From assembly GCF_001194135.2 (NCBI RefSeq), contig NC_069001.1, positions 12,269,954 to 12,305,866 on the forward strand: 35,913 bases of DNA. Direction: 5' to 3'. Source of the DNA: Octopus bimaculoides. Its lineage: Eukaryota. Within the stretch, counting starts at the first letter, position 1; each line of letters begins with the position of its first letter. The notes below the pieces were generated by a model. It saw nothing but the letters and a program-made list of their open reading frames with translations, had not been told where the DNA came from and made no database searches. Positions 26,546 to 27,881 of the stretch are shown in pieces. The position numbers and the translations under genes are program-made.

Positions 26546-27881
26546 CACTGGTCAACAGCCAAAATGATTCTTACATATGAATATGTGCTTCTTACTAATT
26601 TTTTTAGTATTCAAAACAAAGCAAAATTTTCATTGTTTCTCAATTTTCAGCCATATTTGTTGCATGAGAAATTGGTACAGAGGAAAGCTGATTTACAATA
26701 TATATGGGGACGGATTTTAAAATATATTTACCTGAATTAATGAACAACCTCCAATCACCTGATTGGTATGAATCAGATATGAAGAGTTGTTGCATGAGAG
26801 ACTCTGCATCATGACAATAGCAAAAGTTATTTTCCGTTTTGAAAAATACCGAAAGTCGTTCATGCCGAAGACGAGCAGTTGTGATGCGGACCCCGGGTTC
26901 CAGCAGGTTACGTTATTTCAGTCTTCATCCCAGTACCTTTTCTTTAGACAAATCTAGGATCCTAATAAGATCATGAACGGCTCCCTAGTTAAATGGTACA
27001 GGTTCAGGTGGCTCTGGTTCGTCTTGAAAGTCATCATCCATAGAGCTGCTACTGGAATCAGAATCCGTGCTTTGTTCGTGTTCAGCAGGTCGAACTGGAA
27101 CCAGTAATTTTTCACTGTGTATATTACTGATGGAAATGCTGAAGCGGTATTGCTGTATTGTATTGTAATTCGTATCTTCACAGTTATTCCTTTGATGCTT
27201 GTAAGGCAGAAGTAGCAGTCATTATTATGTCCTCTGGTTTCACGAGACAAAAGACAAACCTGAGCTTCGCTTTCCAATCATCCATTCACTCAGGTGATTG
27301 ACACAATATCTACACACTGTATGCGGTGCCCATTTCTTGTCTCGGTCGCCTAATTGGATTATAAAATAGGCTTTGCAGTTTAATCGAATGGCTTTGGTGA
27401 TAGTTAATGCTTTCTAGAGTGAAGAGTCCACAAATATAGCAAAATCAGTTGAGATCGTTTACACATACAGTGTTCCATCCTTTCCAATAGAGTCAGTGAT
27501 TGTGATTTATTGCAATAATAGCCTTGGCTATATAGATTTGTCTAAAGAAAAGGCAAAGGTACTGGGATGAAAACTGAAATAACGTAACCTGATGGAACCC
27601 GGCGTCCTCATCACAACTGCTCGTCTTCGGCATGAACGACTTTCGGTATTTTTCAAAACGGAATTTGAGTGATTTGAAACAAAAGGAAATCAAAAATCGG
27701 TTAATAATAAGCAAATATACTGGATGTAACATAGAGAAAATAATATGAGTCACTCAAACTGATATGTTGGTTCTCGAAAGCTAGACCCGGTACGGCTTAA
27801 ACTTTGTCATATTCGGATTCGCATCTCTGACCAGATTATACCGGAACGATGAAGAAATTTTTTTTTTTTTGCTGACCAATG
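26546..27881. mobile_element. Chapaev(3)-type DNA transposon, internally rearranged
   Basis: Termini CACTGGTCAACA and (reverse complement) CATTGGTCAGCA match at 10/12. A TAA direct repeat flanks both ends (26543-45, 27882-84). Transposase remnants lie inside. Confidence 0.8.
26610..27478 (-). pseudogene. Chapaev-type transposase N-terminal remnant
   Basis: Across frameshifts: CVND..FCYICGLFTL; AYFIIQLGDRDKKWAPHTVCRYC; RE..GHNNDCYFCLTSIKGIT; DLIRILDLSKEK; FFKTENNFCYC; GDWRLFINSGK; SVPISHA. Confidence 0.85.

What the first reader, a model, noticed from the sequence alone, without database searches (positions are those of the whole stretch)
26546..27881. Chapaev transposon with intact ends and TSD but an inverted, partly duplicated interior
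The TIRs and TAA TSD are intact. The transposase N-terminus reads on the minus strand from 27478 to ~26610, while a second copy of the DLSKEK...FFKTE segment reads on the plus strand (27533-27663) before jumping to terminal sequence. The arms 26832-26956 and 27533-27663 differ by 4 substitutions and a 6-nt indel. Both carry the same TGA and TAA stops, so the duplication post-dates inactivation. This fits template-switch or aborted gap repair. If many copies share the layout, it is a mobile hairpin-forming derivative family.
Basis: partly seen in the sequence, partly recalled or inferred. Interest (0 to 1): 0.7.

Follow-up and report, generated by a model that had tools for sequence, protein, structure and literature searches.

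The report
Dead Chapaev3 transposon with repair scars
This is an ordinary decayed, internally deleted copy of a Chapaev3 cut-and-paste transposon in an animal genome, with a 131-base backwards copy of part of its own gene inserted just upstream of that gene, most likely a DNA-repair scar.

Summary
Window 26546-27881 is a 1336-bp Chapaev3 (CMC superfamily) element flanked by TAA/TAA. Its pseudo-gene lies on the minus strand (ATG 27478, readable to about 26619). It matches the published Chapaev3 transposase Garfield_BM (E 2e-47), and the left terminus CACTGGTCAACA is identical to the termini of related elements. A 131-nt inverted copy (27533-27663) of codons lying at 26832-26956 is present. The arms differ by 4 substitutions and 6 nt and share two derived stop codons.

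Three points need correcting. The interior is not inverted: end polarity matches the gene. The inverted copy is a clean insertion into an otherwise continuous 5' untranslated region, not a jump to terminal sequence. One terminus has decayed (CAT instead of CAC).

A separate deletion of about 1.2 kb removed the whole catalytic half. In a full-length relative its endpoints coincide with a GTATCA direct repeat.

Each arm carries its own derived changes, so the duplication is old and real rather than a read-level artefact.

The best reading is two break-repair scars in an already dead copy: a microhomology-associated deletion, and a snap-back or template-switch templated insertion. No close copy exists in any searchable collection, so the idea of a mobile hairpin family could not be tested. 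Interest is low.

The parts
26543..26545 (.). Left target-site duplication, TAA
   Evidence: Direct reading. It matches the TWA consensus of Chapaev3 (PMC4079192, PMC3014272). The preceding base is G, not the usual A.
26546..26611 (-). Retained 3' terminal region of the element, including the 3' TIR (CACTGGTCAACAG... read from the left end)
   Evidence: It aligns with the last 55 nt of full-length relative L003 (74.5%). The first 12 nt are identical to the termini of relatives L015, L021 and L037.
26607..26616 (-). Junction of an internal deletion of about 1.2 kb (GAATAC|TAAAAAAATTAG in gene orientation)
   Evidence: Homology to the L003 ORF ends here and homology to the L003 3' subterminal region begins here. 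In L003 the two endpoints are its only two GTATCA sites, at 1165 and 2374, 1209 bp apart.
26619..27478 (-). Transposase pseudo-gene, residues 1 to about 307 only, with at least 5 stops and at least 4 frameshifts; the catalytic half is absent
   Evidence: tblastn of the L003 transposase places residues 6-307 at 27465-26619. Supported by the alignment A1 and by 35% identity, E 2e-47, to Garfield_BM.
26832..26956 (-). In-place arm: codons DLSKEK..FFKTE in their normal position in the pseudo-gene
   Evidence: It has lost 6 nt (GCAAAG) that the other arm and all outgroups keep.
27479..27532 (-). Gene-proximal part of the 5' untranslated region
   Evidence: Collinear with L001 106-156.
27533..27663 (+). 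Displaced arm: 131-nt inverted copy of 26832-26956, inserted into the 5' UTR. The innermost 4-8 nt (27533-27540) may be native sequence that served as primer
   Evidence: It carries 3 derived substitutions relative to the outgroups. It is absent from L001 at the homologous site. It has no TIR and no TSD of its own.
27664..27881 (-). Distal 5' UTR and subterminal region, plus the 5' TIR (reverse complement CATTGGTCAGCAAAA...)
   Evidence: Collinear with L001 4-101 (score 41 against shuffles 22+-3.8). Collinear with L002 2-229 in gene orientation (score 50 against 22.6+-3.3; the reverse-complement control scores 20).
27882..27884 (.). Right target-site duplication, TAA
   Evidence: Direct reading.

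Best explanation
A non-autonomous, long-dead copy of a Chapaev3 (CACTA-Mirage-Chapaev superfamily) DNA transposon, inserted at a TAA target, with its gene on the minus strand. It carries two independent repair scars.

Scar 1. A deletion of about 1.2 kb joins codon ~307 to a point about 60 nt from the 3' terminus. It removes the whole catalytic domain. It most likely arose by annealing at a short direct repeat, either during abortive gap repair or during microhomology-mediated end joining.

Scar 2. A 127-131-nt templated insertion lies in the 5' UTR. I infer the following sequence of events:
- A double-strand break occurred in the UTR, between ...ACTCAAA and TCTATATAGCC... in gene orientation.
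- The gene-side 3' tail was resected.
- That tail folded back on a 4-8-nt inverted microhomology: UTR CAAATCTA against coding TAGATTTG, 576 nt downstream.
- It was extended by about 125 nt along its own strand.
- The end was then joined to the other side of the break.

A template switch during gap repair that uses the same microhomology gives the same product.

Shown: the anatomy, the family, the order of events (stops first, then the duplication, then independent decay of both arms), and the clean-insertion geometry.

Inferred: the break, the snap-back priming, and which repair pathway acted.
For: Family:
- Garfield_BM match, E 2e-47.
- Relatives carry A|TWA|CACTGG(T/A)CAACA ends.
- TSD is TAA.
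- The literature hallmarks are listed.

Clean insertion:
- Removing 27533-27663 restores collinearity with L001 across the site.
- The 5' region keeps its polarity relative to L002.

Real and old duplication:
- The in-place arm has a derived 6-nt deletion.
- The displaced arm has 3 derived substitutions.
- Both arms share the derived TGA and TAA stops.

Not a nested transposition: the insert has ORF-internal ends, no TIR and no TWA duplication.

Deletion microhomology: the GTATCA sites at both endpoints in L003.

The catalytic half is not present anywhere in the window.

Precedents:
- Template switching during gap repair that inverts transposon segments (PMC3814204).
- Snap-back templated insertions in end joining (PMC2943611 and PMC5728401, listed).
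Against: - The exact progenitor sequence is unknown. The proposed 4-8-nt priming microhomology rests on a 74%-identical relative, which reads GAATTAGCAC at that site. The deletion microhomology rests on a 64%-identical relative.
- From my own knowledge, not checked here: snap-back insertions described experimentally are mostly under 30 nt and are copied from within tens of nucleotides. This one is about 127 nt, copied from 576 nt away.
- The outer junction (27663/27664) shows no clear microhomology.
- The assembly is a gapped short-read draft, with N runs at 25561-25966 and 28332-28744, and no reads were available.
Confidence: 0.6

Rival explanations
1. One complex abortive gap-repair event. 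A trans-acting transposase excised an already defective copy. Resynthesis from the sister copy then made two template switches, producing the inverted segment, and ended prematurely, producing the 1.2-kb deletion. Both scars would date from a single transposition-linked event.
For: Both scars are of the kinds attributed to abortive gap repair and template switching (Rubin and Levy 1997, cited there). The return switch could use the same CAAATCTA/TAGATTTG homology. The deletion endpoints sit at a direct repeat in L003.
Against: Nothing ties the two scars together in time. It needs a dead copy to have been mobilised in trans. The first switch (27663/27664) has no microhomology. The sequence alone cannot distinguish this from the best explanation.
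Confidence: 0.2
2. Founder or member of a mobile derivative family with a hairpin-forming interior. The rearranged element transposed to this site after the duplication, and other copies share the layout.
For: Both termini and a TWA TSD are present. At 1.3 kb, the element is of a size that non-autonomous families reach (PMC3014272).
Against: No second copy lies in the 35.9-kb window. There are no junction matches and no close relatives in any collection. The closest relative lacks the insert. None of the 84 related loci has an inverted coding duplication. None of these searches covers the source genome, so the evidence against is weak.
Confidence: 0.1
3. Assembly artefact: a chimeric join of reads from two family copies in a short-read scaffold.
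For: The element sits in a 2.4-kb contig between two N gaps of about 410 bases each, in a repeat-rich draft.
Against: The path leaves and re-enters the native 5' UTR at the same point. An artefact would need two coordinated strand-inverting errors. The arms are not identical, and each has its own derived changes, unlike palindromic read artefacts.
Confidence: 0.07
4. The inverted segment was copied in trans from another genomic copy of the same family (ectopic filler DNA), rather than from this copy.
For: The displaced arm keeps the ancestral GCAAAG that the in-place arm lacks. This is compatible with a different donor.
Against: The arms share two derived stops and are 97% identical outside the indel. 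A later 6-nt loss in the in-place arm explains the difference without a second donor.
Confidence: 0.03

Closest known systems
Chapaev3 transposons (Garfield, Merrow and Conan families; Chapaev3-N_AC non-autonomous families), CMC superfamily
   Same: It has a 3-bp TWA target duplication and a CAC... terminus. The published non-autonomous TIR CACWGSCCAAC resembles CACTGGTCAACA here. The single-exon transposase has the same N-terminal zinc-finger-like region and the same DLxRDLxLSKxKAELLGSRLK and WRLFIDSSK blocks.
   Different: This copy lacks the catalytic half, including the C(2)C, LH and H(4)H motifs. One terminus has mutated to CAT. Its target flanks are G...A rather than A...T. It is only 35% identical to Garfield_BM, so it belongs to a different, unnamed family.
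Deletion derivatives made by abortive gap repair (Ds from Ac, internally deleted P, Tc1 and Mutator elements), and the Goblin MITE derived from Ozma
   Same: The deletion is internal and its endpoints lie at short repeats. In Goblin, template switching during repair synthesis inverted a transposon segment (PMC3814204).
   Different: Here the inverted piece is coding sequence placed in the 5' UTR, with no accompanying loss at that site. Amplification into a family has not been shown.
Snap-back templated insertions of synthesis-dependent or polymerase-theta-mediated end joining
   Same: It is an inverted copy of nearby sequence inserted at a single point, and a short inverted microhomology at the inner end is plausible (PMC2943611 and PMC5728401, listed).
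   Different: From my own knowledge: the insert is far longer (about 127 nt) and more distant from its template (576 nt) than typical experimental products. The pathway cannot be assigned from the sequence.
Mu killer of maize (partial inverted duplication of MuDR that yields a hairpin RNA and silences the family)
   Same: It is an inverted duplication of transposase-coding sequence within one locus. A sense transcript would fold into a stem of about 125 bp (PMC3440606).
   Different: The stem is much shorter (about 125 bp against about 4 kb). There is no evidence of transcription, small RNAs or trans-silencing. The host is an animal. The arms have already diverged by 3% plus an indel.

Membership tests
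Chapaev3 (CMC superfamily) | 3-bp target-site duplication of consensus TWA | tested here: met
   TAA at 26543-45 and at 27882-84, abutting both termini. The chance of an identical TWA pair is about 0.002. The consensus is taken from PMC4079192 and PMC3014272.
Chapaev3 (CMC superfamily) | Terminal inverted repeats with 5'-CAC ... GTG-3' termini | tested here: met
   The left end, CACTGGTCAACA, is identical over 12 nt to the termini of relatives L015, L021 and L037. The right end reads CATTGGTCAGCA in reverse complement, matching 10 of those 12 positions, with CAC changed to CAT by one transition. I read this as post-insertion decay, and I state the deviation here.
Chapaev3 (CMC superfamily) | Encoded protein homologous to named Chapaev3 transposases | tested here: met
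   The stitched pseudo-ORF against Garfield_BM (Fig. S1 of PMC4079192): 35% identity over residues 6-302, E 2e-47.
Chapaev3 (CMC superfamily) | Autonomous members encode the C(2)C, LH and H(4)H motifs of the CMC catalytic domain | tested here: met
   The closest full-length relative, L003 (intact ORF of 569 codons), has CFLC, LPPLH and HFFHSH. So do the other homologues.
Chapaev3 (CMC superfamily), autonomous element | This copy itself retains the catalytic domain | tested here: not met
   Homology stops at residue ~307 (26619). No match to residues 308-569 exists anywhere in the window. It is therefore a non-autonomous deletion derivative, not an autonomous member.
Chapaev3 (CMC superfamily) | Insertion between A and T (A-TWA-T target preference) | tested here: not met
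   The flanks are G-TAA ... TAA-A. Most relatives examined show A on both sides. This is a reported preference, not a definition.
Mobile hairpin-forming or foldback-like derivative family | Several copies at different loci share the same internal junctions | not testable with these tools
   The source genome is in none of the collections. Exact junction 22-mers gave 0 hits. The window ORFs are not in the protein collection. The best DNA relative is 74% identical and lacks the insert.
Hairpin-RNA silencing locus (Mu killer-like) | Inverted duplication of transposase sequence able to form a long double-stranded stem | tested here: met
   A sense RNA of 26820-27675 folds at -347 kcal/mol against -198+-8.5 for shuffles, z -17.7, with the arms paired.
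Hairpin-RNA silencing locus (Mu killer-like) | Transcription through both arms, derived small RNAs, and silencing of family members in trans | not testable with these tools
   No expression or small-RNA data are available.
Snap-back templated insertion (SD-MMEJ / TMEJ) | Short inverted microhomology at the priming site | tested here: inconclusive
   The innermost 8 nt of the insert (CAAATCTA in gene orientation) could be native UTR complementary to coding TAGATTTG. L001 reads GAATTAGCAC at that site. The true progenitor is unknown.
Abortive gap repair / microhomology-mediated deletion derivative | Deletion endpoints at a short direct repeat | tested here: inconclusive
   In L003 the endpoints coincide with its only two GTATCA sites. 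However, L003 is only 64% identical to the window element.

The most novel reading that the evidence does not exclude
The inverted copy of coding sequence in the 5' UTR makes any sense transcript of this dead element a hairpin with a stem of about 125 bp. The locus could then act as a natural 'killer' locus, feeding small RNAs that silence active Chapaev3 relatives in trans. That would be an animal counterpart of maize Mu killer. Alternatively, it could be the seed of a mobile hairpin-bearing derivative family.
Probability: 0.04. Interest if true: 0.6.

Novelty: new member of a known kind. Interest (0 to 1): 0.15.

Why it matters
It matters little beyond annotation. It is a clearly dissectable case of how cut-and-paste transposons decay into non-autonomous, rearranged remnants. 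It shows one microhomology-associated deletion and one unusually long inverted templated insertion whose order relative to the inactivating mutations can be read from the sequence. It would become interesting only if the source genome showed either many copies with the same junctions or small RNAs mapping to the arms.

Tried and rejected
- Pfam scan of the stitched pseudo-protein: no family. Classification therefore rested on a published Chapaev3 protein instead.
- Exact look-up of eight element ORFs, including the 86-aa ORF that spans both insert junctions: none is in the 15-billion-protein collection.
- Exact junction 22-mers in genome contigs and viral contigs: 0 hits. These collections do not hold animal genomes, so this says nothing about copy number.
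- Metagenome scan for relatives: more than 556 hits, of which the best 80 were kept. All of those are only 32-42% identical, and none is from the same family.
- I ran no further search on the junction-spanning ORF. The first search had already shown that nothing above 61% identity is in that database.
- Nested-insertion reading: rejected. The insert has no TIR and no TSD, and its ends are ORF-internal.
- 'Inverted interior' reading: rejected on end polarity.
- Fold-back priming exactly at the arm boundary (27528-32 against 26957-61): no complementarity by direct reading. Microhomology is possible only if the innermost 4-8 nt of the arm are native.
- Rfam and tRNA scans of the window: nothing found.

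Full report
**What the window is.**
- The 35.9-kb window is a eukaryotic draft scaffold, about 35% G+C.
- It is crowded with microsatellites (83 tandem-repeat rows).
- It is broken by ten N runs. Two of them (25561-25966 and 28332-28744) bracket the 2.4-kb contig that holds the finding.
- It has no tRNA genes and no Rfam hits.

**Check of the observation.**
- The inverted repeat is real: 26832-26945 / 27550-27663 (114 nt, 95%) and 26936-26956 / 27533-27553 (21 nt, 100%). Together they form one 131-column alignment with 4 mismatches and one 6-nt gap, E 5.5e-51 within the window.
- Translations confirm DLSKEKVLG*RLK*RNLLEPGVRITTARLRHERLSVFFKTE on the minus strand and DLSKEKAKVLG*KLK*RNLMEPGVLITTARLRHERLSVFFKTE on the plus strand. 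The stops are the same TGA and TAA.
- TAA flanks both ends (26543-45 and 27882-84).
- The element occurs only once in the window.

**Family.**
- A stitched translation of the minus strand finds 45 homologues, the best at E 1.6e-61. None has a Pfam domain on record.
- It is collinear with them from a Cys/His-rich N-terminus through DCYFC, LxDLxRDLxLSKxxAELLGSRLK and WRLFIDSSK. It stops just before W.ICGDLK.
- The literature defines Chapaev3 by a TWA 3-bp duplication, CAC...GTG termini and the C(2)C, LH and H(4)H motifs (PMC4079192, PMC3014272).
- The Garfield_BM transposase printed in Fig. S1 of PMC4079192 aligns to the pseudo-ORF at 35% identity, E 2e-47.
- The Logan contigs L002 and L003 carry an intact ORF of 569 codons from the same clade, with CFLC, LPPLH and HFFHSH.
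- In eight metagenomic relatives whose termini are visible, the ends read A|TWA|CACTGG(T/A)CAACA....
- The window's left end, CACTGGTCAACAG, is identical to that consensus. The right end is CATTGGTCAGCAAAA in reverse complement, two substitutions away, one of which destroys the invariant CAC.
- Assignment to Chapaev3 is therefore well supported. 'Intact TIRs' is only approximately true.

**Polarity.**
- The last 55 nt of L003, downstream of its stop codon, match the window's left end.
- The window's right-hand 218 nt match the L002 5' region in gene orientation: score 50 against 22.6+-3.3 for shuffles, with a reverse-complement control of 20.
- The gene on the minus strand therefore has the normal orientation relative to its ends. 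The interior is not inverted.

**The displaced arm is a clean insertion.**
- L001 is the closest relative, 74% nucleotide identity over 806 columns. It runs through the homologous 5' UTR without any inverted segment.
- With 27533-27663 deleted in silico, the window element aligns to L001 continuously from L001 position 4 onwards (score 174).
- The 5' part alone scores 41 against 22+-3.8 for shuffles.
- So 27664-27881 is the native distal 5' UTR and subterminal region. There is no jump to terminal sequence.
- The insert has ORF-internal ends, no TIR and no TWA duplication. That excludes a nested transposition.

**Order of events.** Using L001, L003 and L004 as outgroups:
- The TGA (from TCA) and the TAA (from CAA or GAG) are derived and shared by both arms.
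- The 6-nt GCAAAG is ancestral and was lost from the in-place arm.
- Three of the four substitutions are derived in the displaced arm.
- The order was therefore: inactivation, then duplication, then independent decay of both arms.
- This argues against a read-level palindrome artefact.

**The truncation.**
- tblastn of the L003 transposase matches residues 6-307 at 27465-26619 (minus strand) and residues 193-231 at 27532-27648 (plus strand). It matches nothing else in the window.
- Homology to the ORF gives way to homology to the L003 3' subterminal region at GAATAC|TAAAAAAATTAG (about 26607-26616).
- In L003 the two corresponding points are its only two GTATCA sites, 1209 bp apart. This suggests a microhomology-mediated deletion.

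**Mechanism (inferred).**
- The geometry [distal UTR][reverse complement of codons][proximal UTR plus gene] is what results when the 3' tail on the gene side of a break in the UTR folds back on its own strand and is extended.
- The innermost 8 nt of the insert, CAAATCTA in gene orientation, are the complement of coding TAGATTTG.
- The left flank ends in CAAA. The native UTR may therefore have read ...ACTCAAATCTATATAGCC..., broken between CAAA and TCTA. That gives a 4-8-nt primer.
- L001 has GAATTAGCAC at this site, which is only weakly supportive.
- A template switch during transposon gap repair gives the same product and cannot be separated from this model here. Precedents are in PMC3814204 and in PMC2943611 and PMC5728401.

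**Hairpin potential.** A sense RNA of 26820-27675 folds at -347 kcal/mol against -198+-8.5 for shuffles (z -17.7), with the arms paired. This is the basis of the speculative Mu killer-like reading (PMC3440606). Nothing else supports that reading.

**What could not be done.**
- Copy number and sharing of the layout could not be assessed.
- The element's ORFs are not in the protein collection.
- Junction 22-mers have no match in the two collections still open to scanning.
- No relative closer than 74% exists in the fetched loci.
- Among the 84 related loci, every long inverted repeat is either a pair of TIRs or lies outside the transposase match.

**Verdict.** This is a real but ordinary structure: a decayed, non-autonomous Chapaev3 copy with a deletion scar and an unusually long inverted templated insertion.

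Noticed in passing
window 5990-6387 (+), 31790-32203 (+), 8434-8789 (+), 12030-12363 (-), 25283-25469 (-), 611-800 (-): There are six copies (66-82% identical) of a repeat of about 380-400 bp with a conserved head (GGAGTGGCTGTGTGGTAAG...GGTTCCGGGTTCAGTCCCACTGCGTGGCACCTTGGGCAAG), an internal (TA)n/(TG)n microsatellite and a conserved tail. It looks like a SINE. ARAGORN finds no tRNA. From memory only, it resembles the abundant octopus SINE, which would place the window in a cephalopod. I did not test this.
   Followed up: partly
L002 635-2344 and L003 233-1942 (Logan runs SRR25457038 and SRR6063400): An identical, fully open Chapaev3 transposase gene of 569 codons was recovered from two independent sequencing runs. 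L003 ends one base short of the 3' terminus. L002 extends 402 nt further upstream and appears to stop about 12 nt short of the 5' terminus (by eye). This may be a currently active element in another species.
   Followed up: partly
L040 250-479 against 2316-2398 and 2764-2910: In this related Chapaev3 element the left long TIR is continuous, but its right-hand partner is split by about 365 bp of extra sequence. This is another rearranged relative, of a different kind from the window's.
   Followed up: no
window 26657-26669 and 26787-26799: An exact 13-nt direct repeat, TTGTTGCATGAGA, occurs 130 nt apart inside the pseudo-gene. It is probably chance, and I have no explanation for it.
   Followed up: no
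window 10008-10827: This is a purine-rich block (GC skew +0.66 for 10001-11000). It contains an 86-bp tandem repeat of 2.5 copies at 96% identity (10564-10778) and an (AG)n run.
   Followed up: no
window 6844-7078: This is a long imperfect (CAC)n / 51-bp periodic tract with strongly negative GC skew. It generates spurious long ORFs on both strands.
   Followed up: no
window 29591-29844, 30039-30295 and 33889-34054 (-); also 109-304 / 22635-22834 and 2948-3069 / 3492-3621: These are further dispersed or adjacent repeats at 72-82% identity, presumably other interspersed elements.
   Followed up: no
window 11880-11889, 15780-16021, 18212-18221, 19898-20131, 20827-20926, 21552-21779, 22970-22979, 25561-25966, 28332-28744, 33228-33237: There are ten runs of N, which are scaffold gaps, mostly next to microsatellites. 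The assembly is a gapped short-read draft, which limits confidence in any repeat-internal structure.
   Followed up: yes
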